Virus record (IMG/VR): IMGVR_UViG_3300009177_000028
Location: 140,388-204,387 of that record
Direction: 5' to 3' (one strand)
Length of the DNA stretch: 64,000 bases
Both the position numbers and the translations under genes were made by a program. The notes beneath the pieces were generated by a model, which was not told where the DNA came from, ran no database searches, and worked only from the letters and a program-made list of their open reading frames with translations. Below, piece by piece: positions 17,779 through 31,754 of this stretch. The stretch's first letter is position 1; each line of letters opens with the position of its first letter.

Positions 17779-18419
17779 GGCTCTCGATTATAAACCGAAT
17801 CCCCATAAATGCAATAATTCAAATTGCCCATCGGTAAATGCTGATAAACCGCCACTCGCCTCAATGCCTCATAATCCACGCACCTGGCCTCCGCCCAATT
17901 AAACATCGGCTGCATCAAATAGACATCATCATGCTGCGCTCCCAGCAAATGTCCCATCTCATGCAAAGCAATCCCCGTCACCCACTGATTGTACATGCGG
18001 TCGCGAATCATCCACATGCGGTTGCCGCCAATCTCATTGGCCCAAGCTAATGTATACGACTTGCCATGCTTGGTCTTGTCTAACTCCGTTACCATGGAAT
18101 TGCTGCTGTCCGTCTTCATGACCAACCAGCAATTGCCCAATAAACATTGCTTGATAATCTCCGGCTCCATATCAAATCGATAATTAACAACCCGCAACTT
18201 AACATACCCGTTCAAGGCGTAATTCCATTGAGTAATCGCATCGTCAATGGCAAGCTTATCCGCCTCTCCAAAGTTCTTATCCATGTAAATGGAAATAACC
18301 TTCAACGGAACGGGTGAATATCCACCCGCGTTAATATAATGAAACGGCTCCAGCCCTCGATGAGCAAAACATCCAACCGCTAAATACACTGCTAGTAAGA
18401 TTACTAAAAGTCGTTTCAT
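17775..18419 (-). CDS. secreted/lipoprotein metzincin Zn-metalloprotease (matrixin-like)
   Basis: signal/lipobox LAVYLAVGC; HEMGHLLGAQH (HExxHxxGxxH) plus Met-turn YLMQP. Confidence 0.88.
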   Translation of the reverse strand: MKRLLVILLAVYLAVGCFAHRGLEPFHYINAGGYSPVPLKVISIYMDKNFGEADKLAIDDAITQWNYALNGYVKLRVVNYRFDMEPEIIKQCLLGNCWLVMKTDSSNSMVTELDKTKHGKSYTLAWANEIGGNRMWMIRDRMYNQWVTGIALHEMGHLLGAQHDDVYLMQPMFNWAEARCVDYEALRRVAVYQHLPMGNLNYCIYGDSVYNREP

Positions 18420-18431
18420 AAACCATCTCCC

Positions 18432-19196: not shown

Positions 19197-19309
19197 GCAG
19201 TACGTCCTAAATTTTCAAAAGACTCCCCAATCGAAGCCCAATTAAGAAAAATACCAGATTATCCCCAATTGTTTCCAATATTTCACAAAACTAAGACAGA
19301 TGTAATTTA

Positions 19310-19852
19310 TTAGATTATAGATTGAATCACTTGGTGTAAACAACCCACTGCCTTGGTTCCCCTAATAATAATCCCGGCATGGTAATCATAATCCCCTTGG
19401 TCATTGTAATCATGCCAGCATTCCAATAACTCCCCTGCCCCCATTACCCTGTACATCCCAGCCACGGATGGATCCATTAAATAAACTAATCCATTCTTAA
19501 TTCCTACCAAAACTACATAGTGCCCATCATCCCAAACCTCAGACATCTTAGTCTCTGCCGTATAACTACCCCACGCCTGAATACTCAAGATAACCGTATA
19601 TCCCTCAGCCGTTAATCCCTGTAACTCCTCCAGAGTCATATTAGATTTACTGTAGGCAGTTAATCCATAGTTCCTAGCCCCTGCTATCAATCCTTCCCCT
19701 GAGGTTCCTTCATCGGTGGTCCCCAGTAAATCGTATAGCTCTGGCTCTCGGCCATCCCAAACGCCCCAATAGTATAAACAACTGGCTAAACTAGCTGCCC
19801 CACAACTGTAGTCATAGGCTTGGCGGACTATAGGTAAATAGATTAAGCTCAT
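19310..19852 (-). CDS. C39-like cysteine peptidase (stand-alone)
   Basis: RQAYDYSCGAA (Q-x5-C), GHYVVL, LMDP. Confidence 0.88.
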   Translation of the reverse strand: MSLIYLPIVRQAYDYSCGAASLASCLYYWGVWDGREPELYDLLGTTDEGTSGEGLIAGARNYGLTAYSKSNMTLEELQGLTAEGYTVILSIQAWGSYTAETKMSEVWDDGHYVVLVGIKNGLVYLMDPSVAGMYRVMGAGELLECWHDYNDQGDYDYHAGIIIRGTKAVGCLHQVIQSII

Positions 19853-20230: not shown

Positions 20231-20265
20231 GTGGTATGAGTTATGCAATATGCAATCATGCCAAC
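20231..20265 (+). promoter_or_regulatory. repeated sigma54-type element, copy 1
   Basis: TGG-TATGAGTTAT-GC (GG-N10-GC) then AATATGCAATCATGCCAAC. Confidence 0.65.
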
Positions 20266-20380
20266 TACATCGTAATCAATGTAGGATAATCTCTTTTATT
20301 TATCTATACTGTGTGATGAATACTTTTTATTATTATCATTCATCACATGTAGTATATTTTTATTTATTAGAGGAATGTGG

Positions 20381-20415
20381 TTGGTATGCCGTTTGCAATA
20401 TGCAATCATGCCAAC
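20381..20415 (+). promoter_or_regulatory. repeated sigma54-type element, copy 2
   Basis: TTGG-TATGCCGTTT-GC; 26-bp perfect direct repeat with copy 1 (20244-20269 / 20394-20419). Confidence 0.65.
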
Positions 20416-20458
20416 TACAGGTAGGATAAGCAGCAGAAAGCCCCTGAAACCTGGGCGG

Positions 20459-20493
20459 TTGGCATGAAACCTGCAATTAGCAAGCGTGCCAAC
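20459..20493 (+). promoter_or_regulatory. repeated sigma54-type element, copy 3
   Basis: TTGG-CATGAAACCT-GC then AATTAGCAAGCGTGCCAAC. Confidence 0.7.
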
Positions 20494-20560
20494 TACCTGG
20501 GCGGGGCGAGTAGGAGGTCCACCTACCCCAAGCGGGCGCCTCTCTCGTGTGTCGAGCATG

Positions 20561-20644
20561 CCGCGCAACGGCCGATCGTGGCGCGCTAGTGGCGCGGTAG
20601 CGCAAGGATCGGCCGCTAGTGGCGCGGTACCGCGCAACGGCCGA
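20561..20644. repeat. GC-rich A-B-B-A direct repeat block
   Basis: CCGCGCAACGGCCGA at 20561 and 20630; CGCTAGTGGCGCGGTA at 20584 and 20614. Confidence 0.75.
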
Positions 20645-20915
20645 AAGCGCACTAGAAGAGCGCCTAGCGCGACCCTAGCCTATGACACCAAGATCATACC
20701 CCGGATGTAGTCAAAGGTCATGAGCTGTCGTTCAATGTTGCTCGAAAAAGGCTAATGGTTTCGTAGGGTAGACCTACATTATCCGCCAAAACTTTCGGAA
20801 TTCGTCATGGTAGTTTCTTTTCCTACATCGCAATTAGTTGCTGAATTCCGACCAACCAGGACACAAAGATCATTGTGGGATAAGATGCTACACCAATGAT
20901 ATCATATAGTTACAG

Positions 20916-20933
20916 TTGGCACCGACCCTGCAA
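20916..20933 (+). promoter_or_regulatory. sigma54-type promoter
   Basis: TTGGCACCGACCCTGCAA, GG-N10-GC, upstream of boxA and the long plus-strand gene run. Confidence 0.6.
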
Positions 20934-21032
20934 TGACCCCTAGACGCAACGGGAACGGATGAGAGCAGGGGTCACGCGGGCGGATCGCCCGCGCAGCCTG
21001 ACAGCGCACATGGTGCGCGCTGTCGCTCGATG

Positions 21033-21044
21033 TGGTCTTTGACA
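21033..21044 (+). promoter_or_regulatory. rrn-type boxA antitermination element
   Basis: TGGTCTTTGACA, 10/12 to E. coli boxA TGCTCTTTAACA. Confidence 0.5.
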
Positions 21045-21577
21045 ATCTAAACGTCTCACACGGGCGCCTCATGTGCGCCTACAGCGCGCGCCTAGCGCGT
21101 GTGCCTCCTACCTACGGTAAGGGACAGTGTGCGATAGCGGCGACCATATAGGTCCGCTCCTACCGCGTCCCACAATCACCGAGTAGCGCACACAACCGAA
21201 GCCACTGTGGGTTACATGCGGAAGATGTGTGGGCCAGGTGACCCGTCCTACATTCACTCCACACGGGAGACGATGTAGGCTACCCTCACCTAGTGTACGA
21301 ATCCCGAGGAGGGATAAACCGTAGGTAGGGCAATGTCCTGCTAGAGCCGACAATGTAGGCCGCGGTGAGGCGGTATGAGTCCGCAGCGTACGAATCAAGA
21401 GACTAAACGACTATGTGGGAGGGACGCCTAGAGTGTCCTTCCCCCGTAGCGTAAAGCCTACAAGGTAAGTAACTCTCTCCAAGTCTACGGTATTGGAGTA
21501 GGAGAGAACACCTTGTGAGCTTTACGCTGCGATCATCGCAGAGTGTCCCACAACAGCAGACAACAGGAGCCAACATC

Positions 21578-22150
21578 ATGAGCCAGACCACCAGCAACGA
21601 CAGCGCCGTCAAGTCGACCACCATCTCCTCCGATGTGGAGGAGCGTCTCACCGCCACCTTCAAGACCCTTCACCATCTCGTCTCCACCCACATGGTGAGT
21701 GCGGGTGCGAAGCTCACCTTCATGTCGGAGTTCGAGAAGTGTGGGATGGAGGACTACAAGGAGGTCGCGCATGCGGCACGGAAGCTGCTCGGCGCCAAGC
21801 GTCAGGAAAAGTGGGAGAACCGCATCAAGGGGATCCGTGCGGGGATCCAGGGTGTGGTCGACACCTACATGAACCGCAAACGTGCGGCCAAGGCGCAGTT
21901 CGACGCACTCCCGGAGGAGTTGCGCGCAGAAGGTGTGACCTTCAACCCCAACGTCTCCATCCCGGTGAAGGAGCTTGTGGGATGCTTCCCGCAGGGTGCG
22001 ACCCAGGAGCAGATCCTCCGAGACCTGAAGGATCTCTCCTACAACGTCATCCAGAATGCGGAAAAGGCGTACCTCATCCGCGTTGCCTTCGTTGCCGACA
22101 AGGTGGCAGACGAGGCGCCCAAGTCGGAGAAGACCGCCAAGGCGGCCTGA
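21578..22150 (+). CDS. hypothetical protein (first gene of the GC-rich run)
   Basis: AGGAG SD; strongly GC3-biased codons; ends KTAKAA. Confidence 0.85.
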   Translation: MSQTTSNDSAVKSTTISSDVEERLTATFKTLHHLVSTHMVSAGAKLTFMSEFEKCGMEDYKEVAHAARKLLGAKRQEKWENRIKGIRAGIQGVVDTYMNRKRAAKAQFDALPEELRAEGVTFNPNVSIPVKELVGCFPQGATQEQILRDLKDLSYNVIQNAEKAYLIRVAFVADKVADEAPKSEKTAKAA

Positions 22151-22173
22151 GCGCGCAGCGTTCCGCTGAGTCT

Positions 22174-22227
22174 CCTACATCCTGCTCCCAACTGCTCCCA
22201 TGTGGGGTGGTTGGGGGCAGTCGTAGG
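22174..22227 (+). ncRNA. intergenic hairpin family copy H1
   Basis: CCTAC-ATC-CTGCTCCCAAC...GTTGGGGGCAG-TC-GTAGG. Confidence 0.7.
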
Positions 22228-22252
22228 CGAGTCAACCACCAAGGAGGTTCAT

Positions 22253-22474
22253 GTGTTCCATACTCAGCCCAAGACCTACAAGAAGGTCTCTCTCCTCCAC
22301 AAGAACTACTTCGACCTACTCTGCGGCTCCAATGGCTACAGTAGGGAAGAGTACGACATCTGCGAGAAGGAAGACAATCTGGGGTTTCCTGTCTACACCG
22401 TGGACGTGTGGTCGCAAAGGTGCGACGACATGATGCAACGTGTGTTCAGCGAAGCCAACGGCTACAAGCGCTGA
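22253..22474 (+). CDS. hypothetical protein
   Basis: AAGGAGG SD then GTG 22253. Confidence 0.75.
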   Translation: MFHTQPKTYKKVSLLHKNYFDLLCGSNGYSREEYDICEKEDNLGFPVYTVDVWSQRCDDMMQRVFSEANGYKR

Positions 22475-22478
22475 TCTA

Positions 22479-22521
22479 CCTACACCATGCTCCCGAGGGT
22501 TACTTCGGGGGCATGAGTAGG
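22479..22521 (+). ncRNA. intergenic hairpin family copy H2
   Basis: CCTAC-ACC-ATGCTCCCGA...TCGGGGGCAT-GA-GTAGG (compensatory ATGC/GCAT). Confidence 0.72.
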
Positions 22522-22533
22522 AGGACCAGACAC

Positions 22534-22932
22534 ATGTACAAGTACGACGGACACTCCTTCAACATGTGCGAGGAGTGGTCGCAATGCCCACAACATCGAA
22601 CGGAGACCCACATGAAGGACAAGCTCGCTCAAGCGCCCGACCAGGTGCGACAGTTCGTACACGCTCTCATCTCCAACGCCAAAGAGGTGGAAGGGTGGGA
22701 AGTGTGCGACATGGAGGATGGCAAGTGCTTCGCTGACACCATAGCCCACATCGAGCACAAGGAAGACGGAAGGTGGGTGGTGTGCGACAACTACGAACGG
22801 TTCTTCTCTCTCATCTACACCTACACGGTGGCAGGCGAGTGGACCGTGCGCCGCATGTATGGCGAAGGTGGGGAGATGCCCTACAGCTTCGCCAAGTGTA
22901 TGGCGGATGCCTCCATCATGTTCACTGGCTGA
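22534..22932 (+). CDS. hypothetical protein
   Basis: AGGAGG SD; fills the space between H2 and H3. Confidence 0.75.
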   Translation: MYKYDGHSFNMCEEWSQCPQHRTETHMKDKLAQAPDQVRQFVHALISNAKEVEGWEVCDMEDGKCFADTIAHIEHKEDGRWVVCDNYERFFSLIYTYTVAGEWTVRRMYGEGGEMPYSFAKCMADASIMFTG

Positions 22933-22936
22933 TCCA

Positions 22937-22978
22937 CCTACGTCATGCCCTCATGTGTGTACATGGGGGCATTGGTAG
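22937..22978 (+). ncRNA. intergenic hairpin family copy H3
   Basis: CCTAC-GTC-ATGCCCTCATG...CATGGGGGCAT-TG-GTAG. Confidence 0.7.
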
Positions 22979-23019
22979 TGGGATTAGGCTCACTAACACC
23001 AAACAAGGGAGAATGTAAG

Positions 23020-23199
23020 ATGATCAAGTTCATTGTGGTTGTTCTGGCGTGCATCGGGGCATTCTTCGGTCTGGCGATTCTGTCGGGTCATGTCCCCCAG
23101 ATCTCCCACACCGCCTTCAACATCAGCACCTTTCAGGTCACGTGGTTGATGCTGGGCGTGTGTGCGACCGGGTTCGTCTCCTACAAGGTGTGCAAGTAA
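23020..23199 (+). CDS. small two-TM membrane protein, paralogue of 38068-38253
   Basis: MIKF...H.P...AF....WL..G.C...F..YK..K shared. Confidence 0.75.
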   Translation: MIKFIVVVLACIGAFFGLAILSGHVPQISHTAFNISTFQVTWLMLGVCATGFVSYKVCK

Positions 23200-23253
23200 A
23201 GGGTGCTGTAAGCGCCTAACGTACACATAACGTTACTCCAATCGAGGAAAACA

Positions 23254-23300
23254 GCGGCATATAGGCGCCTAGGTGGGTTCGACTCCCACATGCCGCCCTA
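23254..23300 (+). ncRNA. tRNA-like minihelix (acceptor stem plus T-arm)
   Basis: GCGGCAT/ATGCCGC 7-bp stem, TAGG-CG-CCTA mini-hairpin, GTGGG-TTCGACT-CCCAC T-arm. Confidence 0.5.
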
Positions 23301-23324
23301 AGTCATACATCAGCGGAGGATGTC

Positions 23325-23531
23325 ATGGTCAAGGTTACCAAGTGCCCCAATGTGGGTGATGCGGTCAAGATCGTCAAAGGCAAGAGGTCGGGTGATGTAG
23401 GCATCATCAAGCGATGTGCCTCGGTGTGGGGAGAGGACCGACTCAAGTGGTCGTCCTTCCTACTCGACATCAATGGTGAGGAAGTGTGGGTGCGTACGCA
23501 CCATGTGGAGAAACTGGAGAACGCGGCCTGA
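23325..23531 (+). CDS. KOW/SH3-like small protein
   Basis: VGDAVKIVKGKRSGDVGII KOW-like motif; ends ENAA. Confidence 0.6.
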   Translation: MVKVTKCPNVGDAVKIVKGKRSGDVGIIKRCASVWGEDRLKWSSFLLDINGEEVWVRTHHVEKLENAA

Positions 23532-23533
23532 CA

Positions 23534-23574
23534 CCCACACCCTGCTCCTAAGTAATCCTTGGGGGCAGAAGTGG
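23534..23574 (+). ncRNA. intergenic hairpin family copy H4
   Basis: CCCAC-ACC-CTGCTCC...GGGGGCAG-AA-GTGG (compensatory CCAC/GTGG). Confidence 0.7.
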
Positions 23575-23608
23575 TTGGCACGCTTGCATATAGCACAACG
23601 TATGCCAA
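23574..23608 (-). promoter_or_regulatory. repeated sigma54-type element, copy 4 (antisense)
   Basis: minus strand TTGG-CATACGTTGT-GC then TATATGCAAGCGTGCCAAC. Confidence 0.65.
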
Positions 23609-23620
23609 AGGAGGATTCCC

Positions 23621-24145
23621 ATGAAGATCAAGAGCCAGCGCACCACGACCTACACCGAGACCTACTCCCTCACCTTCGAGTACATCGGCTCCAATGGGAG
23701 CGGGTGTGCGTTCGACTGCGACAAGGAGGGAAAGGTCGACCTGACCAAGCTGCACCCGTGTGCGATTCTGACCTACACCGAAGCCAAGTTCGGACAGGTC
23801 ACCCGACGTGAGAACGTGCAGTACCGTGTGGGTGCAGATGGGGAATACGAGCCCATCCCCGGCACGGGTGAGATGGTCACCCGAGAGGTGAGCAAGGGTG
23901 AGGTCATCACCTACATCAACCGCCAGATCGTTCCTGCGGTGGGAGAGTGTGATTGTTGTGGGAGGGATGTCCACCTCTACGGTTTCACCAACACATGTGA
24001 GTGTGGGGCCGACTACAACATGTCGGGTCAGATGCTCGCTCCTCGTGAACAGTGGGGAGAGGAGACAGGTGAGACAGCCGCCGACATCCTCTCCTTCGAC
24101 TCCTACGATCGGGAGCCCATGGGCACCGATGAAGGATGGTTCTGA
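23621..24145 (+). CDS. hypothetical Cys-rich protein
   Basis: GGAGG SD; CDCC..C.C cluster. Confidence 0.8.
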   Translation: MKIKSQRTTTYTETYSLTFEYIGSNGSGCAFDCDKEGKVDLTKLHPCAILTYTEAKFGQVTRRENVQYRVGADGEYEPIPGTGEMVTREVSKGEVITYINRQIVPAVGECDCCGRDVHLYGFTNTCECGADYNMSGQMLAPREQWGEETGETAADILSFDSYDREPMGTDEGWF

Positions 24146-24161
24146 CAAAGTAGGAGTGCCG

Positions 24162-24203
24162 CCTACACCCTGCCTTCATGTGCAAGCATGAGGGTAGAAG
24201 TAG
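24162..24203 (+). ncRNA. intergenic hairpin family copy H5
   Basis: CCTAC-ACC-CTGCCTTCATG...CATGAGGGTAG-AA-GTAG (two G-U pairs on plus strand). Confidence 0.72.
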
Positions 24204-24237
24204 TTGGCATGCTTGCATGTAGCAGATTGTATGCCAA
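24203..24237 (-). promoter_or_regulatory. repeated sigma54-type element, copy 5 (antisense)
   Basis: minus strand TTGG-CATACAATCT-GC then TACATGCAAGCATGCCAAC. Confidence 0.65.
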
Positions 24238-24269
24238 TCGACCCCAAACACCCAAGGTAGGAGAGTGTC

Positions 24270-24830
24270 ATGAACTTCACGACCAAACCGGATACGTTCG
24301 TTCTCGTGGTGGCGGCCCTGTCGGATAAGCTGGTCCAGAAGGAGAACGAGTGTGTGGAGCTGCGAGACCACATCGCCTCCGACCATGCCAGCATGGACGA
24401 CATGCAGCGCACCATCACCGACCTGCGGGTCCAGTGTGAGCGACTGCAAGACAAGGCGGATGATGTGGACTACTTCCGCACTCGCTATCAGGACATGTCC
24501 CACAAGCTGGAGAACTACGAACACCTCCGCTCACAGAATGCCGAACTGTGGGAGCAGGTGCGAGTCCTGAAGATGGAGAACCACAAGCTCCGCTACGGTG
24601 GGCAGACTCCCGAGGAGACGGCCAACAACTACATGCTCTCCCAGGGGAGGCAGGTGTGGGAGCGTGGCAACAAGATTCAGTGCATCAAGGAGGTGCGAGA
24701 GGTGAGTGGATGGGGGCTGAAGGAAACCAAGGATTGGTGCGAAGCCTACATCGCCCGCCTGGATAACGAAAAGGAGGAGAGCGGCCCCGGTACCAAGCGC
24801 TCCTCCGGCAACGTAGCCAAAACTGGCTGA
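24270..24830 (+). CDS. coiled-coil protein with ribosomal bL12 (L7/L12) C-terminal-domain-like motif
   Basis: heptad-rich region then NKIQCIKEVREVSGWGLKETKDWCE. Confidence 0.65.
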   Translation: MNFTTKPDTFVLVVAALSDKLVQKENECVELRDHIASDHASMDDMQRTITDLRVQCERLQDKADDVDYFRTRYQDMSHKLENYEHLRSQNAELWEQVRVLKMENHKLRYGGQTPEETANNYMLSQGRQVWERGNKIQCIKEVREVSGWGLKETKDWCEAYIARLDNEKEESGPGTKRSSGNVAKTG

Positions 24831-24834
24831 CGCA

Positions 24835-24876
24835 CCTACACCCTGCCTCTATGTGTGAACATGGGGGCAGGAGTAG
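24835..24876 (+). ncRNA. intergenic hairpin family copy H6
   Basis: CCTAC-ACC-CTGCCTCTATG...CATGGGGGCAG-GA-GTAG. Confidence 0.72.
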
Positions 24877-24911
24877 CTGATTCAGACACAACACATGAAA
24901 GGAGAGAGGTC

Positions 24912-25037
24912 ATGAAGGTTCACAAGTCGCAGCGTGTGTTCCAAGAGGAGAAGAAGTATCCGGGTGTGGGTGCCCTCATCTGCGTCGGCTCTGGTCTCCT
25001 CTTTTGGGGGAGCTTGGCCTACCTCTTCGTTCACTGA
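24912..25037 (+). CDS. small membrane protein
   Basis: GAGG SD; C-terminal hydrophobic helix. Confidence 0.55.
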   Translation: MKVHKSQRVFQEEKKYPGVGALICVGSGLLFWGSLAYLFVH

Positions 25038-25057
25038 GGGAGTAGTGGGTCCAAGGG

Positions 25058-25092
25058 GTTGGCATGCTTGCATAGTGCAACATCCATGCCAC
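25058..25092 (-). promoter_or_regulatory. repeated sigma54-type element, copy 6 (antisense)
   Basis: minus strand GTGG-CATGGATGTT-GCA, canonical TTGCA -12 box. Confidence 0.7.
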
Positions 25093-25237
25093 AGCAGGCA
25101 TGTCGCCCCTACACCTACCTCAGAATACCTTCACCTATAATTCTTGTTGCACCTAACTTGAAACGTGCTAACTTATAATCTCGCCATTCTCGCAAGCCAA
25201 GGCCAAAACCTACATCGGCCCCATTAGGAGATAAGTC

Positions 25238-26131
25238 ATGAACGTGTATGAGATTGTCACCGAACGGATCATTGCAGCCCTGGAAAAGGGTGTCGTACCT
25301 TGGCGCATGCCCTGGCGTACCCAAGGTGGGAGCGGTCTCCCCAAGAACCTACAGAGTGGGAAGGAGTACCGAGGTGTCAACATCTTCCTACTGGGTGCGC
25401 AGGGGTACGCCTCTCCCTGGTGGGTTACCTACAAGCAGTGTACGGCCCGAGGTGGGCAGGTGCGCAAAGGTGAGAAGGGCACCCCGGTCATCTTCTGGAA
25501 GGTAGGAGATCATAAGACCAAGGTGGGCAAGAGTGGGAAACCGGAGAAGATGTTTATCCTCCGGTACTACACTGTCTTCAATGTCGCCCAGTGTGATGGG
25601 CTGGACTACCCCAAGGAGGCGGTGGTGGAAGCTCCCACCTTCGACCCCATCGAGCAATGCGAGAAGATCGTTCTCGCCTACAAGACCCTACCCAAGATTG
25701 AGCACGGAGGTGGGCGAGCCTGCTACTCCCCCTCCTTCGACAAGGTGATGATGCCGGAAAAGGAGAGCTTTGGTAAGAGGGAGGAATACTACTCCACACT
25801 CTTCCACGAGCTTACCCACAGCACCGGACATGAGAGCAGGTTGAACCGGGATGGGATCATGAATCCCATTCGGTTTGCCTCACATGACTACAGCTTTGAG
25901 GAGCTGGTAGCAGAATGTGGGGCGGCCTTTCTCTGCGCACATGCGGGTATCTTGGATACCACGCTGGACAACTCGGCCGCCTACATCTCCCACTGGGTGA
26001 GCAAGCTGAAGAGTGAGCCAAGGTGGATTGTGGAAGCCTCAAGTAAGGCAGCTAAGGCGGCTGACTACATCATGGGAGACCTGGTCAAAAAGGAGTCAGA
26101 GTCGGAGGAGTCAAGCGAGGAAGCCGCTTGA
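25238..26131 (+). CDS. ardC: ArdC-family ssDNA-binding antirestriction protein with zincin-like domain
   Basis: GVVPWRMPW, YRGVN, TYKQ..GGQVRKGEKG, YTVFNVAQ, TLFHELTHSTGH..RLNR, YSFEELVAE. Confidence 0.93.
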   Translation: MNVYEIVTERIIAALEKGVVPWRMPWRTQGGSGLPKNLQSGKEYRGVNIFLLGAQGYASPWWVTYKQCTARGGQVRKGEKGTPVIFWKVGDHKTKVGKSGKPEKMFILRYYTVFNVAQCDGLDYPKEAVVEAPTFDPIEQCEKIVLAYKTLPKIEHGGGRACYSPSFDKVMMPEKESFGKREEYYSTLFHELTHSTGHESRLNRDGIMNPIRFASHDYSFEELVAECGAAFLCAHAGILDTTLDNSAAYISHWVSKLKSEPRWIVEASSKAAKAADYIMGDLVKKESESEESSEEAA

Positions 26132-26218
26132 ACCGACATGTCAGGGACTGGGCTGGCCTACTCGGCTGGCTCAGTCTATTATCCTACATCCTCACACACA
26201 AGCCCTGAAAGGACGACC

Positions 26219-26638
26219 ATGAACGACAAGAGACCCTGGAATGAGGGAGGGGAGGAGAAGCCATATAGTGTCTCACTGTGGATACAGGATCCCTCCGACA
26301 TGAGTGACAATGACACATGTATGGCCGGGGAAGACTTCGCCACCGAAAAGGAAGCGCGAATGTGTCTGGCCGACATGAACGCACACTTCAATGACAGGTT
26401 CTACAAGGACGTACCTTATGTCCTGTTGGACGGCCCGAACGACCTACACGAGGTGACAGTGCGCACCCAAGCCCTCAAGCGGATGCAACGTGAGAGGGAG
26501 TGCGAGGACAGGGCGGCAAGGTCGGAGATGGCCATGCAAGCTGGGATGGGTATGGGCATTCATGCCTACAACGACATGATGGGATACGACTCTGAAGAGT
26601 ACGACCCTGACCTACACGGATACCTGCACGAAGACTGA
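26219..26638 (+). CDS. hypothetical protein
   Basis: AAAGGA SD; acidic. Confidence 0.75.
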   Translation: MNDKRPWNEGGEEKPYSVSLWIQDPSDMSDNDTCMAGEDFATEKEARMCLADMNAHFNDRFYKDVPYVLLDGPNDLHEVTVRTQALKRMQRERECEDRAARSEMAMQAGMGMGIHAYNDMMGYDSEEYDPDLHGYLHED

Positions 26639-26667
26639 GCAACCACAACAACCCGAAAGGTACGACC

Positions 26668-26886
26668 ATGAGCGACAACAACGGCAACAAGAGCGAAGGT
26701 AGCATCAAGACCGACAAGCGGAAGCAGTCTCTCTACTTTCCGGAGAGCATGCTCCAAGAGATCAAGGAGGAGGCGGCTCGGCTGGATCGTAGTCTGTCGT
26801 GGGTGGTTCAGCGTGCATGGAAGCTGGCACGCACCGAAGTCAAGAATCTGCCCAGCGTCTCCGACATCGAGACGGAGGACGAGTAA
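26668..26886 (+). CDS. MXAN_4361/MXAN_4362-family (TIGR04563-like) ribbon-helix-helix small protein
   Basis: DKRKQSLYFPESMLQEIKEEAARLDRSLSWVVQRAWKLAR matches the myxobacterial family as recalled. Confidence 0.88.
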   Translation: MSDNNGNKSEGSIKTDKRKQSLYFPESMLQEIKEEAARLDRSLSWVVQRAWKLARTEVKNLPSVSDIETEDE

Positions 26887-26894
26887 TCGTACCA

Positions 26895-26936
26895 CCTACA
26901 CCCTGCCCATTAGTGAGAGCTAGTGGGCAGGAGTAG
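26895..26936 (+). ncRNA. intergenic hairpin family copy H7
   Basis: CCTAC-ACC-CTGCCCATTAG...CTAGTGGGCAG-GA-GTAG. Confidence 0.72.
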
Positions 26937-26970
26937 TTGGCATGCTTGCATGTTGCACATCTCATGCCAC
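26936..26970 (-). promoter_or_regulatory. repeated sigma54-type element, copy 7 (antisense)
   Basis: minus strand GTGG-CATGAGATGT-GC then AACATGCAAGCATGCCAAC. Confidence 0.65.
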
Positions 26971-27004
26971 GGGGCGCCAGGCCCACACTCACCCACAATT
27001 CAGC

Positions 27005-27022
27005 GTGGCACATGACTTGCAT
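27005..27022 (+). promoter_or_regulatory. sigma54-type promoter (sense)
   Basis: GTGGCACATGACTTGCAT, canonical TGGCAC-N5-TTGC. Confidence 0.65.
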
Positions 27023-27079
27023 GTAATTGCATGGTCAATCAAAAGTGCTACAATTGATCAAAAGGAAAAGGAGGTTATC

Positions 27080-27313
27080 ATGTTTGGTATGAACAAGGCG
27101 CACATTGACACCGTCTATCAGCGAGAGGACGACATGTCCGACCTGATGCGCCGATGTCGGATGGCCCTCGACATGGGAGCCTCCAAGGAAGAAGTTCACG
27201 ACATCTGCATCCAAGCGGGTCAAAGTGAGGAACAAGCCTACTTGACCTACATCGCAGCCAAGCTGCTCACACGTGACGAAGCGTGCGAGACTGGCGCCCG
27301 AAAGGTGGCCTGA
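27080..27313 (+). CDS. hypothetical protein
   Basis: AAGGAGG SD, ATG 27080. Confidence 0.75.
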   Translation: MFGMNKAHIDTVYQREDDMSDLMRRCRMALDMGASKEEVHDICIQAGQSEEQAYLTYIAAKLLTRDEACETGARKVA

Positions 27314-27314
27314 C

Positions 27315-27791
27315 ATGTACTCCAAAGAGATCAAAGGTAGTTGGTTCGGCGTGACCATTCCCGAATGGTTGCGAGCCTTCGACTGTCGGTCCAGCGAGGA
27401 CGATATCGCACCTCGTACTCCCTGGGGCTCCTATCTCTGGTCAAGTGAGAGAGCTGCCGTGGACCTGGGCCTGCGTGCGGAAGGTGTCTACAACGACACT
27501 ACGCCCGTGGGCTGCTCCACCTACATCGATGCTCGTACGGCTCCTGAGTCGGAGTTGAAACGACAGGTGGAGAATATGGTGGCAGAGGCGACCAGACTTC
27601 GGGAGGAGTACCTAGAAGGGAAGAAGTTTCCCGATACTGAGGGACAAGGTGGGAGTTGTCTCTACATGCCGGTGGCTGTCTGCCTGAGTAACTTCGGGTG
27701 GTCGGTCCTGGCAGATCGGACCCAAGGAATCGTTCGCCGGTTTGGCTACAATGCCACACCCAAACGTACCAAGAAAGGAAGTGTGCGATGA
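27315..27791 (+). CDS. hypothetical protein
   Basis: abuts previous stop; ATGA overlap to next. Confidence 0.75.
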   Translation: MYSKEIKGSWFGVTIPEWLRAFDCRSSEDDIAPRTPWGSYLWSSERAAVDLGLRAEGVYNDTTPVGCSTYIDARTAPESELKRQVENMVAEATRLREEYLEGKKFPDTEGQGGSCLYMPVAVCLSNFGWSVLADRTQGIVRRFGYNATPKRTKKGSVR

Positions 27792-28390
27792 GCAAGTACA
27801 AGGGTGACGGGGCGTTGGAGCAGATCAACCCCGAGCGACTTACCTTGGGGTGTGTGGTGCGCATGCCCTACGGAAGTGGGGAAGTGCCTGCCTTTGGTGA
27901 CAGTGTCATCATCGGTATCCACGTCTCCTACTCTTCCAAGCGAACGAGTAAGGAGCGGTGCGATAAGCGCCACTACGAGACTCTCGCACAAGCTCTTACC
28001 CAAGCGCAGGATGGCGACTTCGTGGTGGTGAGTCTGGCTCGCCCCTACGTGTACGCCAACAACCCCTTCGTCTCTACACCGGGCTGGCTGGTCGGGTGCG
28101 AGAAGTACGAGGTGATGGGAGACCGCATCATCGACACCCACAAGGTGGTGGTTCAGAGCACGGGTGAGTATGCCACCTACAACATCAAACCTGCGCTCCA
28201 TTCGTGGGAGGTGGTGGTTGGCAACATCGGGAGCGTCTATCGCGACTTGTCGGAGAGCGCGGCCCGAGCCACCTACAAGGTGTACGTAGAGAACAGCAAG
28301 TGGCAGGGTGGACGTGCCAGTGGGGAAAGCGTCACTCTCTTCTGCGATGGTGAGATTGTGGAGGAGCATGTGGGGACGGTGGAAGGATGA
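27788..28390 (+). CDS. hypothetical protein
   Basis: coupled ORF, coding-like GC3. Confidence 0.75.
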   Translation: MSKYKGDGALEQINPERLTLGCVVRMPYGSGEVPAFGDSVIIGIHVSYSSKRTSKERCDKRHYETLAQALTQAQDGDFVVVSLARPYVYANNPFVSTPGWLVGCEKYEVMGDRIIDTHKVVVQSTGEYATYNIKPALHSWEVVVGNIGSVYRDLSESAARATYKVYVENSKWQGGRASGESVTLFCDGEIVEEHVGTVEG

Positions 28391-28629
28391 TTACATACCT
28401 CGACCCCAAACAAGTCATTGCCAAGCGCCAGACCACTCCTCCCCACAACCGGAGTCGCAGTGGGTATGGCAACAAGCTGCCTACATCCTGGGAGCTTCAA
28501 CTACAGGACAAGCGGTGGAGGCGGGTGTACGTGATTCAGTGGAGCAACGCTGGATCCGCCTACATCCTGGTCAAAGGTGAGAAGTTGTTCCTGGGTTCCT
28601 ACGAACCCTCCTATGAAGGGAAGGTGTGA
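28387..28629 (+). CDS. conserved phage-type hypothetical protein
   Basis: GYGNKLPT...RRVY..WSNAGSAY motif recalled from phage hypotheticals. Confidence 0.7.
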   Translation: MITYLDPKQVIAKRQTTPPHNRSRSGYGNKLPTSWELQLQDKRWRRVYVIQWSNAGSAYILVKGEKLFLGSYEPSYEGKV

Positions 28630-28630
28630 G

Positions 28631-29011
28631 ATGGGCTGGGATAAAGCATGCGGAGATGAGCAGTGTGAGGGATGTGACGCCACCCTGGAGGAAGGGGAGG
28701 ACATGTATGTCCAAGGGGACAGCGTGTACTGCGAAGGGTGCAACGAGGACCGCTTGGATGACGAAGCGGGTGAATGGGATGAATTGGACTACATGGACCG
28801 TGAAGGTGACTATCCCATCGATGGGGTAGGATTCGCGGACCCTGGTGGTCACTCGGCCCTACGTGCAGCTACACCCAACAACCCAAGGGACTGCGATTGT
28901 CCTACCTGTGGGGCGGAGGACGTTCTGACCCGCATCGACCGTCAACGTGGGTATCAGTGCGACAGGTGCGCTGATCGGGCGGAAGGTCGGAGCGGGTACG
29001 GAGACTACTGA
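28631..29011 (+). CDS. Zn-finger acidic protein
   Basis: several CxxC pairs (CEGC, CPTC, CDRC). Confidence 0.75.
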   Translation: MGWDKACGDEQCEGCDATLEEGEDMYVQGDSVYCEGCNEDRLDDEAGEWDELDYMDREGDYPIDGVGFADPGGHSALRAATPNNPRDCDCPTCGAEDVLTRIDRQRGYQCDRCADRAEGRSGYGDY

Positions 29012-29012
29012 C

Positions 29013-29330
29013 ATGAAGACACTGGTGCTGGTGGAGGATGATCTGATGCTTGCTAGCACCTTCATTCGGGTGTTGGGCAAAACTCACAACATCCTCCACT
29101 TCCTGACAGTCAAGGATGCCAGAGCACATCTGGCCTTGAATCCCACACCTGATGTCCTCCTCCTGGATCGTCAGGTGGGGTATGACAATGGGTGGGCGTT
29201 GCGGGAGGAGGTGGGTACGGGTGTCAGGGTGGTCCTGATGACGGGCGCTCCTCCCCAAGGCAATTCACTTACCTTCTTCCACAAGGGAGTAGATAACATA
29301 CAAAAACTTATCAGTATGGTAGAAGGCTAA
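29013..29330 (+). CDS. stand-alone receiver domain protein
   Basis: LVLVEDD, VLLLD, VLMTG, FHKG. Confidence 0.8.
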   Translation: MKTLVLVEDDLMLASTFIRVLGKTHNILHFLTVKDARAHLALNPTPDVLLLDRQVGYDNGWALREEVGTGVRVVLMTGAPPQGNSLTFFHKGVDNIQKLISMVEG

Positions 29331-29334
29331 ACTT

Positions 29335-29377
29335 CCTACACCCTGCCTATTAGAATTATCTAGTGGGCAGAAGTAGG
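29335..29377 (+). ncRNA. intergenic hairpin family copy H8
   Basis: CCTAC-ACC-CTGCCTATTAG...CTAGTGGGCAG-AA-GTAGG. Confidence 0.72.
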
Positions 29378-29421
29378 GGGATTCATCCTGAATCTTCTGA
29401 GACAAGGAAAGAGGAGAGCGC

Positions 29422-29976
29422 ATGAATAAGTTGGTGTATGCGGTAGTGGTTGCCTTGGCAGCGGTGGTGGGATGTGCAGCTCCGGTGGGAGACAAGTCGG
29501 AGCAGGTGGGACAGGTCAGTCAGGCGCTGGTTACCTTCGACCCTGCGACAGGGACGGGGTTTGTGGGGAAAGGTGATATCCAGCTTCCCTTCGGGTGGAA
29601 CAATGCCACCTTGCAGGCCAATGCAAGTTCGCTCACCTTCACCTACCAGAGCAGCGCCACCTACGAGGCGGTGTGCGAGTGGACCACCGGTGAAGGGACT
29701 CGTGGTCAACGGACCCACGATGTCACACACACCAAGACCAGTGTGGTCAACGACACCATCTCCTACGATGCTCGCACCCACAAGCAGGTGGACGGATTCT
29801 TCCTGACAGGGTACGGCAGTGTGACCGAAGGTGGGGAACCTGTTCCCGAGGTAGGAGGACCCTGCCCTGGCAACCCTGGAACGGATGGGGTGTGGGTCAG
29901 TGTGGTCCTGCTCAACTCCACGGGTGGGGGCTTGTGGGTGACCAACGCAGCGGGTGGGACGGCTCAGCTTCTGTAG
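29422..29976 (+). CDS. lipoprotein of unknown function
   Basis: lipobox LAAVVGC; FDPATGTGFVGKGDIQLPFGWNN motif recalled from bacterial secreted hypotheticals. Confidence 0.8.
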   Translation: MNKLVYAVVVALAAVVGCAAPVGDKSEQVGQVSQALVTFDPATGTGFVGKGDIQLPFGWNNATLQANASSLTFTYQSSATYEAVCEWTTGEGTRGQRTHDVTHTKTSVVNDTISYDARTHKQVDGFFLTGYGSVTEGGEPVPEVGGPCPGNPGTDGVWVSVVLLNSTGGGLWVTNAAGGTAQLL

Positions 29977-29984
29977 AGATACTT

Positions 29985-30058
29985 TCTACATCCTGCCGAT
30001 TATTCGTCTGGCTGATAAACTCGGTTTATTCGTCTGGCAGATAGTCGGCAGTAGTAGG
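29985..30058 (+). ncRNA. intergenic hairpin family copy H9 (extended)
   Basis: TCTAC-ATC-CTGCCGATTAT...ATAGTCGGCAG-TA-GTAGG; loop holds TATTCGTCTGGC twice (30001, 30027). Confidence 0.68.
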
Positions 30059-30304
30059 AGGTGTGTCATGTAATCGGCTAACTAACTTGTTTACCCGATA
30101 GTGTGGGAAACCCTGAGAGTGTGTCGCGACATTCAAGACATGGTGTATTGAATGGGCGCATGTGAGAATCCACGATACCCCAAGAGCTTTTGACGACAAT
30201 GTAGTTCTAAGTCTTCTATTACTCGCCTATAACCGAAACCTGCCGAAAGGGTGGGGAGTAGGTTATGGGCGCACATAGAGGGATTAGAAAGGAAAGGCAA
30301 GACC

Positions 30305-30769
30305 ATGCACGACATCAACGGCAAACCACTTCACATCGGCTCGGACATCTACTCTTCCCTACATGGACTCTGCAAGATCGTCGGTGTGCGAGAGGAGCAC
30401 AATCCCGACCAGGGAGGAGCTTGCATCGAGGTAAACTCCTACACTCGGGGTGGAGGTATCATCCTTCGCACTCACGAGCACAAGGTGACCAAGGTGCGTA
30501 CTTGGAAGGAGATGGCGGATGAATCCCTACGGGTGCAGGATGCCTGCAACCTGTCGGGAGTGGTCCACGCTTTCTCTACCATCATCACCGAGGTGCGCAC
30601 ACGGTTGGACAGTGAGGGCCAGGGTGGGACGGACAACGTCAACAACCATCCTGTCTGTCGTCTCTTCTCCGACAAGATTGCTTCCCTGACGGGTACGCAA
30701 TTCTGCAACGATGACGCACACCAAAACTTCTCCGATGCCTACAAGTGGGCACACGAGCAGAGCAAGTGA
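30305..30769 (+). CDS. hypothetical protein
   Basis: SD-like GGAAAGG; GTGA overlap to next. Confidence 0.75.
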   Translation: MHDINGKPLHIGSDIYSSLHGLCKIVGVREEHNPDQGGACIEVNSYTRGGGIILRTHEHKVTKVRTWKEMADESLRVQDACNLSGVVHAFSTIITEVRTRLDSEGQGGTDNVNNHPVCRLFSDKIASLTGTQFCNDDAHQNFSDAYKWAHEQSK

Positions 30770-30981
30770 GCAAGAAGCCTACTTACTCCCTGGTGAAGGG
30801 AGATGTCTTCATCGGGTCTGACTTGCAAGCCTGGACGGTGGACGAAGTGGTCAAACCGGAGGGCTGGAACACACTTCCGCAGATTGGGGAAAAGCCCAAG
30901 GTGTGGGAGGTGAGAGCACATCGGGGCCAAGCCAATCGGCGCTTCTACTACCACGGCACACGTTTGGTGGAAGTCAAGTAG
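30766..30981 (+). CDS. hypothetical protein
   Basis: GTGA overlap. Confidence 0.65.
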   Translation: MSKKPTYSLVKGDVFIGSDLQAWTVDEVVKPEGWNTLPQIGEKPKVWEVRAHRGQANRRFYYHGTRLVEVK

Positions 30982-31127
30982 TTACGCGCACTTAGGTGAG
31001 ACATTATCGGTATGGCGATAAGAATATCGCTATAGCGATAAAAAGTCTGTAACCACTTGGAACTACAGGGGAATGCGCGAACTAGGGCGCGAGAGTCGGA
31101 GGTGTAGGGCGGGCTGGGCCTGGGGTG

Positions 31128-31162
31128 GTTGGCATGTTTGCATGTAGCAAAAAGGGTGCCAC
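31128..31162 (-). promoter_or_regulatory. repeated sigma54-type element, copy 8 (antisense)
   Basis: minus strand GTGGCACCCTTTTTGCT, canonical TGGCAC-N5-TTGC. Confidence 0.7.
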
Positions 31163-31375
31163 CTGCCGCTGGAGCTTCTGGGAGGCGCACCCGCACCTAC
31201 CTTCTGCTTCAATTCTTTTGCAATTGAGCGTTTCTTAGTGGCGCATGTGAAAGCGCGCTCCCATAATGAATGGCCAGCGCAAACAAACGAATGAGAGGGG
31301 TGGGACAATGAAGCTGGGAATCTGACAACGGCAATTCAACCTGCAACCTCAACCTACAGAGAAGGATAATCAACC

Positions 31376-31705
31376 ATGGCAATGCGAGCAATCAACGAAG
31401 TTCACGACAGCGCAATCATCCGACAGTTGGTCACGATGGACGAGATGGACCTCTTCATGTCCACCTTCGACCAGACTGTCACGGTAGGTGAGCATCCACT
31501 AACCTTCTCGGGATGGGCAATCAAGAATGAAGTGCAGGTGATGCAGTGTGCGTCCGAGTGCGACATCGCCTTGGGGCTGCTGGCGCTGTCTCCCATCTTT
31601 CAGCACAAGGACTACGCGGATGACGCCTTGTACGAGGTGGGATGTCTGATGCACGGTAGCGAAGAAGAATACATCAACTTCTTGATGTTGATCAGCAATC
31701 GCTGA
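31376..31705 (+). CDS. hypothetical protein
   Basis: GAAGGA SD. Confidence 0.75.
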   Translation: MAMRAINEVHDSAIIRQLVTMDEMDLFMSTFDQTVTVGEHPLTFSGWAIKNEVQVMQCASECDIALGLLALSPIFQHKDYADDALYEVGCLMHGSEEEYINFLMLISNR

Positions 31706-31709
31706 TTGT

Positions 31710-31754
31710 CCTACACCCTGCCCATAACTGGAAACGGTTGTGGGCATGAGTAGG
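31710..31754 (+). ncRNA. intergenic hairpin family copy H10
   Basis: CCTAC-ACC-CTGCCCATAAC...GTTGTGGGCAT-GA-GTAGG. Confidence 0.7.

What the first reader, a model, noticed from the sequence alone, without database searches (positions are those of the whole stretch)
22174..31754. Family of ten intergenic RNA hairpins with a conserved 3x2 internal loop and covariation
Seen: CCTAC-A(C/T)C-CTGC(C/T)..variable stem-loop..GGCAG-(G/A)A-GTAG(G) at 22174, 22479, 22937, 23534, 24162, 24835, 26895, 29335, 29985, 31710, most starting 3-9 nt after a stop codon. Compensatory changes: CTGC/GCAG to ATGC/GCAT (H2, H3) and CTAC/GTAG to CCAC/GTGG (H4). G-U pairs occur only if the plus strand folds, so this is an mRNA-sense structure. 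No U-tract; the 3' arm sometimes runs into the next SD (GTAGGAGG at H2). Inference: RNase III-type processing sites, protein-binding antitermination sites like HK022 put, or translation-coupling switches; probably not in Rfam.
Basis: partly seen in the sequence, partly recalled or inferred. Interest (0 to 1): 0.8.

Follow-up and report, generated by a model that had tools for sequence, protein, structure and literature searches.

The report
Phage intercistronic RNA hairpin family
Ten near-identical-based RNA hairpins punctuate the ends of successive early-type genes in an uncultivated soil huge phage; they are a real, strongly covarying, undescribed mRNA structure that most likely marks sites where the polycistronic message is recognised and cut or regulated.

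Summary
All ten hairpins exist at the stated coordinates, all on the + (coding) strand. A covariance model finds no others in the 204-kb phage contig, 5 in a related 203-kb phage contig and more than 25 in soil and rhizosphere metagenome contigs. It finds no true match in 185,000 bacterial species genomes, in Bacillus phage G or in Rfam. Across 42 distinct copies, 97.5% of cells pair and 13 of 16 pairs show double compensatory changes. G·U versus A·C mismatches are 65:2, and 13 of 20 tetraloops are GNRA, so the folded molecule is sense-strand RNA. The element is larger than reported. The flanks form a third helix (P0) that usually contains the upstream stop codon, giving an interrupted helix of roughly 20-25 bp. 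The invariant part is CUAC/GUAG, a 3x2 loop (ACC/RA) and CUGC/GCAG. Apical stems are hypervariable. The hairpins sit between ORFan genes and an ArdC anti-restriction gene, downstream of three tandem sigma-54-like promoter motifs. They have no U-tracts and usually no room for a promoter. The best reading is that they are T7/SP82-like intercistronic processing or recognition sites for RNase III or a dedicated factor. This function is inferred, not shown.

The parts
22174..22227 (+). H1, long-apex hairpin after gene 21515-22150. P0 pairs UGA 22167-22169 with the 3' flank up to about 22234.
   Evidence: CM R1 48.8 bits; fold z -5.1
22479..22521 (+). H2, 4 nt after the stop of 22253-22474. The 3' arm GUAGGAGG is the SD of 22534-22932.
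   Evidence: 59.1 bits; z -6.9
22937..22979 (+). H3, 4 nt after the stop of 22534-22932. Variant internal loop GUC/UG.
   Evidence: 51.2 bits; z -4.6
23534..23575 (+). H4, 2 nt after the stop of 23325-23531. P1 variant CCAC/GUGG. Abuts a 34-bp motif.
   Evidence: 52.4 bits; z -2.7
24162..24204 (+). H5, 16 nt after the stop of 23621-24145. Abuts a 34-bp motif. P0 pairs with the 5' half of that motif.
   Evidence: 55.8 bits; z -5.7
24835..24877 (+). H6, 4 nt after the stop of 24270-24830.
   Evidence: 60.5 bits; z -5.3
26895..26937 (+). H7, 8 nt after the stop of 26668-26886 (RHH-like). Abuts a 34-bp motif. The apex is hypervariable between strains.
   Evidence: 62.2 bits; z -6.2; apex replacement
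29335..29377 (+). H8, 4 nt after the stop of 29013-29330 (receiver domain, assigned by eye only).
   Evidence: 59.3 bits; z -3.8
29985..30058 (+). H9, long-apex hairpin 8 nt after the stop of 29422-29976.
   Evidence: 40.7 bits; z -5.9
31710..31754 (+). H10, 4 nt after the stop of 31376-31705.
   Evidence: 53.2 bits; z -6.2
20231..20492 (+). Three tandem 34-bp quasi-palindromes (20231-20264, 20381-20414, 20459-20492) with sigma-54-like GG-N10-GC on the + strand, upstream of the hairpin-bearing gene array. Candidate promoters; role unproven.
23575..23608 (-). 34-bp motif directly after H4; the canonical GG-N10-GC arm reads on the - strand.
24204..24237 (-). 34-bp motif directly after H5; same orientation as the copy after H4.
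25059..25092 (-). 34-bp motif upstream of ardC, with no hairpin before it.
26937..26970 (-). 34-bp motif directly after H7.
31129..31162 (-). 34-bp motif in the non-coding stretch upstream of gene 31376-31705.

Best explanation
Each element is a cis-acting structure in the sense-strand mRNA of an early-type, operon-like gene array of a huge (phage-G-like) soil phage. It is a three-helix interrupted hairpin. P0 is 5-8 bp, variable in sequence, and usually contains the stop codon of the upstream gene. P1 is the invariant CUAC/GUAG. A 3x2 loop ACC/RA follows. P2 starts with the invariant CUGC/GCAG, continues as a freely covarying stem, and is often capped by a GNRA tetraloop. I propose that the invariant P1-loop-P2 base is the recognition and cleavage site of a double-strand-specific endoribonuclease. 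This would be host RNase III, or a phage factor that directs or replaces it. The nuclease would cut at or near the internal loop on the 3' side. The polycistronic early transcript would thereby be divided into single-gene mRNAs. The upstream product would keep its stop codon and a protective 3' P2 hairpin. The downstream product would begin with A-GUAGG just ahead of its Shine-Dalgarno sequence. Because a terminating ribosome must melt P0 and P1, translation of the upstream gene and processing or SD exposure would be coupled. Shown: the structure, its strand, its covariation, its position and its phylogenetic spread. Inferred: cleavage, the identity of the factor and the consequences for expression.
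For: The structure is real and RNA-level. 97.5% of cells pair, 13/16 pairs have double changes, and 0/500 shuffles reach this. G.U:A.C is 65:2. 13/20 tetraloops are GNRA. The minus-strand CM scores of the same loci are 20-40 bits lower. The third helix is supported: native flank duplexes average -7.1 kcal/mol against -5.0 for swapped partners, with 0/20000 permutations reaching the native mean, and the stop codon is paired in 20/32 cases. The total duplex is roughly 20-25 bp with internal loops. T7 and SP82 RNase III substrates likewise carry internal loops and are cut once on the downstream side (PMC1935012; PMC4838370). Position: 39 of 43 copies lie within 34 nt downstream of a stop on the coding strand, with a mode of 4 nt. 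There is no U-tract and no excess of sigma-70 promoters or terminators. Many next-gene starts lie only 11-45 nt after the hairpin, so transcription must read through. The context resembles the T7 early region, with three tandem promoter-like motifs upstream, ArdC anti-restriction and ORFans. The core is invariant between phages whose flanking proteins are only 34-50% identical.
Against: There are no RNA data: no RNA run was listed. No RNase III gene is present in the two ~200-kb phage fragments, which are only about 48% complete, and the host is unknown. P1 is only 4-5 bp, and P0 is weak or absent in some copies. RNase III does not normally require a 22-nt invariant sequence, so the conservation points at least as strongly to a sequence-specific binder whose action need not be cleavage. 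In G001 and L045, several copies are followed by a co-oriented promoter-like motif, which would also fit a terminator/promoter cassette.
Confidence: 0.45

Rival explanations
1. The hairpin is an operator for a dedicated phage-encoded RNA-binding protein that does not cleave. The protein would bind the invariant P1/loop/P2 base at every early cistron junction and co-ordinately repress or time translation of the downstream genes, or protect the mRNAs. This would be an RNA regulon like T4 RegA or coat-protein operators.
For: 22 nt are nearly invariant in more than 40 copies while the rest of the stem is free to vary. The internal loop itself covaries: ACC/RA, GUC/UG twice, and U7 with U82 in 4/4 cases. 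One lineage, L045, shifted most copies together to CCAC/GUGG, as expected if the copies co-evolve with one reader. Hairpin ends lie within about 35 nt of the next start codon in roughly half the cases.
Against: No candidate RNA-binding protein was identified. The neighbouring genes are ORFans with no RNA-binding Pfam or PHROG hit. The distance to the next start ranges from 3 to more than 150 nt, which is loose for a translational operator.
Confidence: 0.22
2. The hairpin is part of a composite terminator/attenuator plus promoter cassette, PeSL-like. It would stop or attenuate transcription from upstream, the 34-bp sigma-54-like motif behind it would restart transcription, and the repeated cassettes would serve as recombination points for shuffling ORFans.
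For: The hairpin is directly followed by the 34-bp motif at H4, H5 and H7. It is followed by co-oriented GG-N10-GC motifs in G001, L045, L038, L048 and L056. Gene order around hairpins is shuffled between G000, G001 and L045. The apex of H7 was replaced in an otherwise 97%-identical strain. The PeSL precedent is described in PMC2839356.
Against: There is no U-tract. Seven of ten window hairpins have no motif behind them, and the next gene follows after 12-45 nt, so efficient termination would silence it. In G000 the five internal motifs have their canonical arm on the opposite strand. A gene indel next to H6 does not have its end-points at the hairpin.
Confidence: 0.15
3. The hairpin is a self-contained translational-coupling switch with no trans-acting factor. 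It would sequester downstream sequence until a ribosome terminating at the stop codon inside P0 melts P0 and P1.
For: The stop codon is paired in P0 in 20/32 cases against 44% in swapped controls. The stop-to-hairpin spacing peaks at 4 nt, which places P1 inside the footprint of a terminating ribosome (footprint size from general knowledge). GUAGGAGG or P0 3' strands overlap the SD in H2, H9, L049, L048:4088, L052 and K2.
Against: In most copies the SD lies 10-40 nt beyond the structure. A pure switch gives no reason for an invariant internal loop and P2 base.
Confidence: 0.1
4. The hairpin is a DNA-level element: an attC-like or REP-like single-strand DNA hairpin used by a recombinase or transposase, or a hairpin promoter or origin.
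For: The architecture recalls integron attC, with a conserved basal box, an unpaired spacer, a second box and a variable top, one after each small co-oriented ORF. Gene content is shuffled among relatives.
Against: The GNRA tetraloop excess and the 65:2 G.U:A.C ratio point to RNA. The attC R-box consensus is absent. No tyrosine recombinase is present in either fragment. The gene indel in L040 carries no hairpin of its own. There are no copies outside one 10-kb stretch of 204 kb and no true match in 185k bacterial genomes.
Confidence: 0.04

Closest known systems
RNase III processing sites of the phage T7 early region (R0.3-R1.3) and of Bacillus phage SP82 early mRNA
   Same: Both are sense-strand hairpins between successive early cistrons. 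Both are interrupted by an asymmetric internal loop, span about two helical turns in total, and share sequence around the loop among the copies in one phage. Both lie in an operon headed by tandem promoters that includes an anti-restriction gene. In T7 and SP82 the loop restricts cutting to one site on the 3' side (PMC1935012).
   Different: There is no sequence relation. P1 is only 4-5 bp, and there are two internal loops. The stop codon is built into the basal helix. The core is far more invariant, across phages with 34-50% protein identity. The apex is hypervariable. Cleavage has not been demonstrated, and the host is unknown.
PeSLs (promoter-early stem-loops) of T4-type phages (PMC2839356, PMC4122927)
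   Same: Both are repeated intergenic stem-loops, some paired with promoter motifs, that flank ORFans in a plastic region. Gene order is shuffled between relatives.
   Different: In PeSLs the conserved part is a sigma-70 promoter, and the stem-loop is a generic G/C-rich terminator. Here the conserved part is the hairpin base with its internal loop. The accompanying motif is sigma-54-like, is present at only a minority of copies, and is inverted in G000. There is no sigma-70 excess.
Integron attC sites
   Same: Both have a conserved basal box, an unpaired spacer, a second box and a variable terminal structure, located just after the stop codon of small co-oriented genes.
   Different: attC sites fold as DNA and are recombined by IntI at RYYYAAC/GTTRRRY boxes. 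Here the signatures are those of RNA (G.U pairs, GNRA loops), the boxes differ, no integrase was found, and an observed indel is not a gene-plus-hairpin unit.
HK022 put antitermination RNAs
   Same: Both are cis-acting phage RNA structures that lack a U-tract.
   Different: put consists of two stem-loops located once downstream of each early promoter. The hairpins here are single and follow ten successive genes.

Membership tests
Phage RNase III processing sites (T7 / SP82 type) | Sense-strand RNA duplex of about 20 bp or more (two helical turns) | tested here: met
   P0+P1+P2 give roughly 20-25 bp in most copies. RNA-level folding is supported by a G.U:A.C ratio of 65:2 and GNRA loops.
Phage RNase III processing sites (T7 / SP82 type) | Internal loop or bubble within the duplex, which limits cutting to the 3' side | tested here: met
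   The 3x2 loop ACC/RA is present in all copies. This property of T7 and SP82 substrates is taken from PMC1935012.
Phage RNase III processing sites (T7 / SP82 type) | Intercistronic position within a polycistronic transcript | tested here: inconclusive
   The intergenic, coding-strand position is met. Polycistronic transcription is inferred only from the lack of promoters and terminators.
Phage RNase III processing sites (T7 / SP82 type) | Actual cleavage by RNase III | not testable with these tools
   No RNA run was listed. No RNase III gene is present in the phage fragments. The host is unknown.
Intrinsic (rho-independent) terminator | GC-rich hairpin followed by a U-tract | tested here: not met
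   None of the ten is called by the terminator scan, and no T-run follows any copy.
HK022 put | Two-stem-loop RNA in the promoter-proximal leader, one per early operon | tested here: not met
   These are single hairpins at the 3' ends of ten successive genes.
PeSL cassettes | Sigma-70 early promoter fused to the stem-loop | tested here: not met
   Five sigma-70-like sites were found against 7.5 expected, and none lies at a hairpin. The adjacent motif is GG-N10-GC type.
PeSL cassettes | Flank ORFans in a plastic region, with shuffling between relatives | tested here: met
   Gene order is rearranged among G000, G001 and L045. The genes are ORFans.
Integron attC | R''/R' boxes RYYYAAC / GTTRRRY and an IntI integrase | tested here: not met
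   The boxes are CCUAC / GUAGG. There is no PF00589 hit in G000 or G001 (both are fragments).
REP / REPIN | Many dispersed near-identical copies genome-wide, with a RAYT transposase | tested here: not met
   Copies are confined to 10 kb of 204 kb. The apices are all different. No true match was found in bacterial genomes.
Any Rfam family | Match to a curated covariance model | tested here: not met
   There are no hits at gathering thresholds. No hairpin is hit at E<=1.

The most novel reading that the evidence does not exclude
The hairpins are the cis half of a phage-specific 'RNA punctuation' system. A dedicated phage-encoded, sequence-specific RNA-binding protein or endonuclease, not host RNase III, would read the invariant CUAC-ACC-CUGC / GCAG-RA-GUAG motif at the end of every early cistron. 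Because the stop codon is locked into the basal helix, translation termination and RNA processing would be mechanically coupled. The apical stems are replaced wholesale between strains. Together with sigma-54-type promoter palindromes, the hairpins would form exchangeable regulatory cassettes in a compositionally foreign (55% vs 40% GC) early region of huge phages.
Probability: 0.25. Interest if true: 0.8.

Novelty: new variant of a known kind. Interest (0 to 1): 0.62.

Why it matters
Huge phages are known almost only from metagenomes, and very little is known about how they organise early gene expression. This is a clean, strongly covarying and easily synthesised RNA element with about 40 natural variants. 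It would give a direct experimental handle on that question through in vitro cleavage, binding or reporter assays, without culturing the phage. The element is also a compact lineage marker, since it was found only in this phage group among all collections searched. It should be added to RNA family databases.

Tried and rejected
1. Chimeric contig. Rejected: the 40%/55% GC junction is syntenic in the independent contig G001.

2. Bacterial or prophage origin. G000 is an IMG/VR virus record, 48% complete, with tail-fibre and baseplate genes. Its nearest isolate is Bacillus phage G, at 31% identity on the baseplate wedge.

3. Hairpins in phage G or in bacterial genomes. None were found. The pattern hits in 8 bacterial genomes score 22-27 bits with no upper stem, so they are chance matches.

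4. Stop-codon read-through or recoding signal. The frame after the stop often stays open through the hairpin (19/32). However, the downstream gene is not preferentially in frame (14:8:10), and H2, H4, H7, H8, H9 and H10 hit a stop within 7-15 codons. Rejected.

5. K-turn. Rejected by inspection: no tandem G.A pairs follow the 3-nt side of the loop.

6. Phage-encoded RNase III, tyrosine recombinase, sigma-54 or bEBP. None is present in G000 or G001, but both are roughly half genomes.

7. Functions of neighbouring genes. Pfam, PHROGs and the protein Atlas gave only ArdC, a weak RHH hit, an L12-CTD-like segment and a coiled coil, plus a receiver domain assigned by eye. No RNA-binding candidate emerged.

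8. RNA evidence. No RNA run was listed. DNA contigs from four soil runs showed strain variants that keep the hairpin, plus a 31-nt insertion exactly between H4 and the 34-bp motif.

9. Other hairpin families in 32-64 kb. None was found.

10. CCTAC/GTAGG over-representation outside the hairpins. Not significant (z about 1.4-1.6).

Full report
**Observation.** The 11-mer CYACRYCMTGC has ten exact matches in the 64-kb window. All are on the + strand and all lie at the stated sites. There is no further copy in the whole 204,387-bp contig. Each folds on its own into CUAC/GUAG, a 3x2 internal loop and an upper stem. In seven of the ten the hairpin is 42 nt with a 12-bp upper stem and a tetraloop.

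**What the genome is.** The window is the last 64 kb of an IMG/VR virus record that CheckV rates 48% complete. It carries tail-fibre and baseplate genes. Its nearest isolate is Bacillus phage G, at 31% identity on the baseplate wedge. It is therefore a fragment of an uncultivated huge myovirus.
- Near-identical DNA occurs in many soil, rhizosphere and groundwater runs.
- The contig is about 40% GC up to roughly window 20000 and 50-57% GC after it.
- The same junction and synteny occur in an independent 202,609-bp viral contig, G001. The GC jump is therefore real and not an assembly chimera.

**Family and covariation.** A covariance model (R1) was built from the ten copies plus two from G001.
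- It finds only those ten copies in G000 and five in G001.
- It finds more than 25 further copies in soil and rhizosphere metagenome contigs fetched by a pattern scan.
- The eight bacterial genomes hit by the same pattern are chance matches of 22-27 bits with no upper stem.
- Phage G has none. Rfam has nothing at gathering or E<=1 thresholds.
- In 42 distinct sequences, 97.5% of cells pair and 13 of 16 pairs carry changes on both sides (86 cells). No shuffle out of 500 and no slid register comes close.
- This alignment was fitted to the model. However, the MAFFT alignment of the first twelve sequences already gave 8 pairs with double changes.

**Evidence that the folded molecule is sense RNA.**
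- Mismatches of the G.U type outnumber the A.C type 65 to 2. Unselected transitions would give equal numbers, and the complementary strand would carry 65 A.C mismatches.
- Thirteen of 20 apical tetraloops are GNRA, against 1/32 expected.
- The minus-strand CM scores for the same loci are 20-40 bits lower.

**Extended anatomy.** Folding with 15-nt flanks shows a third, basal helix in most copies.
- Native upstream and downstream flank pairs form duplexes averaging -7.1 kcal/mol, against -5.0 for swapped partners. None of 20,000 permutations reaches the native mean.
- The flank sequences differ from copy to copy and change in step, for example UGAUC/GAUCA, UGAGC/GCUCA, UGAUU/AAUCA and gUGA/UCAa.
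- The 5' strand of this helix usually contains the stop codon of the upstream gene. At least two of its three bases are paired in 20 of 32 copies, against 44% with swapped flanks, and 0/200 controls reach the observed mean.
- The distance from stop codon to hairpin peaks sharply at 4 nt (17 of 39), then at 8 nt (10 of 39).
- The whole element is therefore P0 / small loop / P1 CUAC:GUAG / ACC:RA / P2, giving roughly 20-25 bp.
- The internal loop itself covaries. It is ACC/RA in most copies and GUC/UG twice, and U at position 7 always occurs with U at 82.
- The invariant part is about 22 nt around the loop. The remainder of P2 is free to vary.
- Between G000 and a strain 97% identical in the flanks, 10 of 18 apical nucleotides of H7 differ, all compensated. 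A second strain shows paired indels in the same hairpin.

**Context.** The hairpins lie in one 10-kb stretch of co-oriented small genes with good Shine-Dalgarno sequences.
- Only ArdC (anti-restriction), a weak RHH hit and a receiver domain (assigned by eye) are recognisable. The rest are ORFans.
- There is no excess of sigma-70 promoters or intrinsic terminators, and no U-tract follows any copy.
- Many downstream start codons lie only 11-45 nt after the hairpin. There is no room for a promoter, so transcription must continue through the hairpin.
- About 1.7 kb upstream of H1 lie three tandem 34-bp quasi-palindromes with sigma-54-type GG-N10-GC spacing on the + strand. Five more copies lie inside the array, three of them abutting H4, H5 and H7, but with the canonical arm on the minus strand.
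- In G001 and L045 the equivalent motifs behind hairpins are co-oriented with the genes.
- Gene order around the hairpins is shuffled among G000, G001 and L045.
- One strain-level gene indel beside H6 does not have its ends at the hairpin.

**Mechanism.** The size, the internal loops, the intercistronic position and the operon layout match the phage RNase III processing sites of the T7 early region and of SP82. The layout comprises tandem promoter-like motifs, an anti-restriction gene and a hairpin after each cistron. In T7 and SP82, internal loops restrict cutting to one site on the 3' side.
- A cut on the RA side would leave the upstream mRNA with its stop codon and a 12-bp 3' hairpin. It would start the downstream mRNA just ahead of its SD. 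This is an inference.
- The near-invariance of the core across phages with only 34-50% protein identity is more than RNase III is known to need.
- The joint shift of most L045 copies to CCAC/GUGG points the same way. A dedicated phage reader, nuclease or not, is therefore a serious rival.
- A terminator/promoter cassette of the PeSL type fits the copies followed by the 34-bp motif, but not the majority without it.
- Pure translational coupling fits the stop codon in P0, but not the invariant loop.
- DNA-level readings (attC-like, REP-like) are contradicted by the RNA signatures, the absence of an integrase, the wrong box consensus and the confinement to 10 kb.

**Not supported.** The put-like antitermination reading fails on position and architecture. 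Read-through signalling fails because downstream genes are not preferentially in frame and six of ten window copies meet a stop within 7-15 codons.

**Verdict.** This is a real, well-supported and undescribed family of sense-strand mRNA hairpins, specific to a lineage of huge soil phages. Its function is not shown. The best-supported reading is a processing or recognition site at cistron boundaries of an early operon (confidence about 0.45). I class it as a new variant of a known kind.

Noticed in passing
window 20231-20264, 20381-20414, 20459-20492 (+); 23575-23608, 24204-24237, 25059-25092, 26937-26970, 31129-31162 (canonical arm on -); weaker copies near 52409 and 54779: A second repeat family: a 34-bp quasi-palindrome, TTGGYAYG..TTGCA-N3-TGCAA..TGCCAA. 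One arm has sigma-54 -24/-12 spacing (GG-N10-GC). G001 has six co-oriented copies of TTGGCATACTCTGTGCTACTTGCA. In G000 the five internal copies are inverted relative to the genes. No sigma-54 or bEBP gene is present in the fragments.
   Followed up: partly
window ~20000 (G000:160,000): GC content jumps abruptly from about 40% to 50-57% and stays high to the contig end. The jump is conserved in the related contig G001. The high-GC part holds ArdC, Ku (57316-58071), a primase/polymerase-like gene (54819-56435) and mostly ORFans. It may be a compositionally foreign module within a huge phage.
   Followed up: partly
window 23254-23298 (+): A tRNA-like minihelix: a 7-bp acceptor stem plus a T arm (GTGGG-TTCGACT-CCCAC), with only a short palindrome in place of the D and anticodon arms. 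ARAGORN does not call it. Rfam gives only a sub-threshold hit (E 0.46).
   Followed up: partly
window 26903-26930 versus L043:1779-1821 and run X2: The apical stem of H7 is hypervariable between strains. Ten of 18 nt differ, all compensated, while 135 nt of flanks differ at 2 positions. This suggests replacement or conversion of hairpin tops.
   Followed up: partly
window 23570/23571: Contigs from two soil runs (X14, X16) carry a 31-nt insertion, containing its own small GACCC/GGGTC hairpin, exactly at the junction between H4 and the 34-bp motif. The two modules are therefore separable.
   Followed up: no
window 24890-24912 versus L040: A strain 91-95% identical has an extra 116-aa gene between H6 and the 41-aa gene at 24912-25037. 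G000 retains what looks like that gene's stop codon fused to the next SD (TGAAAGGA).
   Followed up: partly
window 20500-21500: About 1 kb of GC-rich non-coding sequence lies between the three promoter-like motifs and the first gene. It contains internal repeats (for example TAGTGGCGCGGTA twice) and many GTAGG/CCTAC words. It may be a long structured leader.
   Followed up: no
window 14242-19852 (- strand): The phage encodes a PAS histidine kinase (14242-15459). It also encodes three peptidase-like genes: a weak M10/M12-like match at 17775-18419, trypsin-like at 18432-19196 and C39-like at 19310-19852. A stand-alone receiver domain at 29013-29330, inside the hairpin array, was assigned by eye only.
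   Followed up: partly
window 24270-24830: The gene before H6 combines a coiled coil with a segment matching the ribosomal protein L7/L12 C-terminal domain (26.6 bits against a cut-off of 25.9).
   Followed up: no
window 30990-31050: A non-coding stretch contains repeated ATCGCTATAGCGAT-type palindromes (GGTATGGCGATAAGAATATCGCTATAGCGATAAAAAG). It looks operator-like.
   Followed up: no
all hairpin loci: The reading frame that continues past the upstream stop codon stays open through the hairpin in 19 of 32 cases, against 6-7 of 32 for the other two frames. The downstream gene is nevertheless not preferentially in that frame. This is unexplained.
   Followed up: partly
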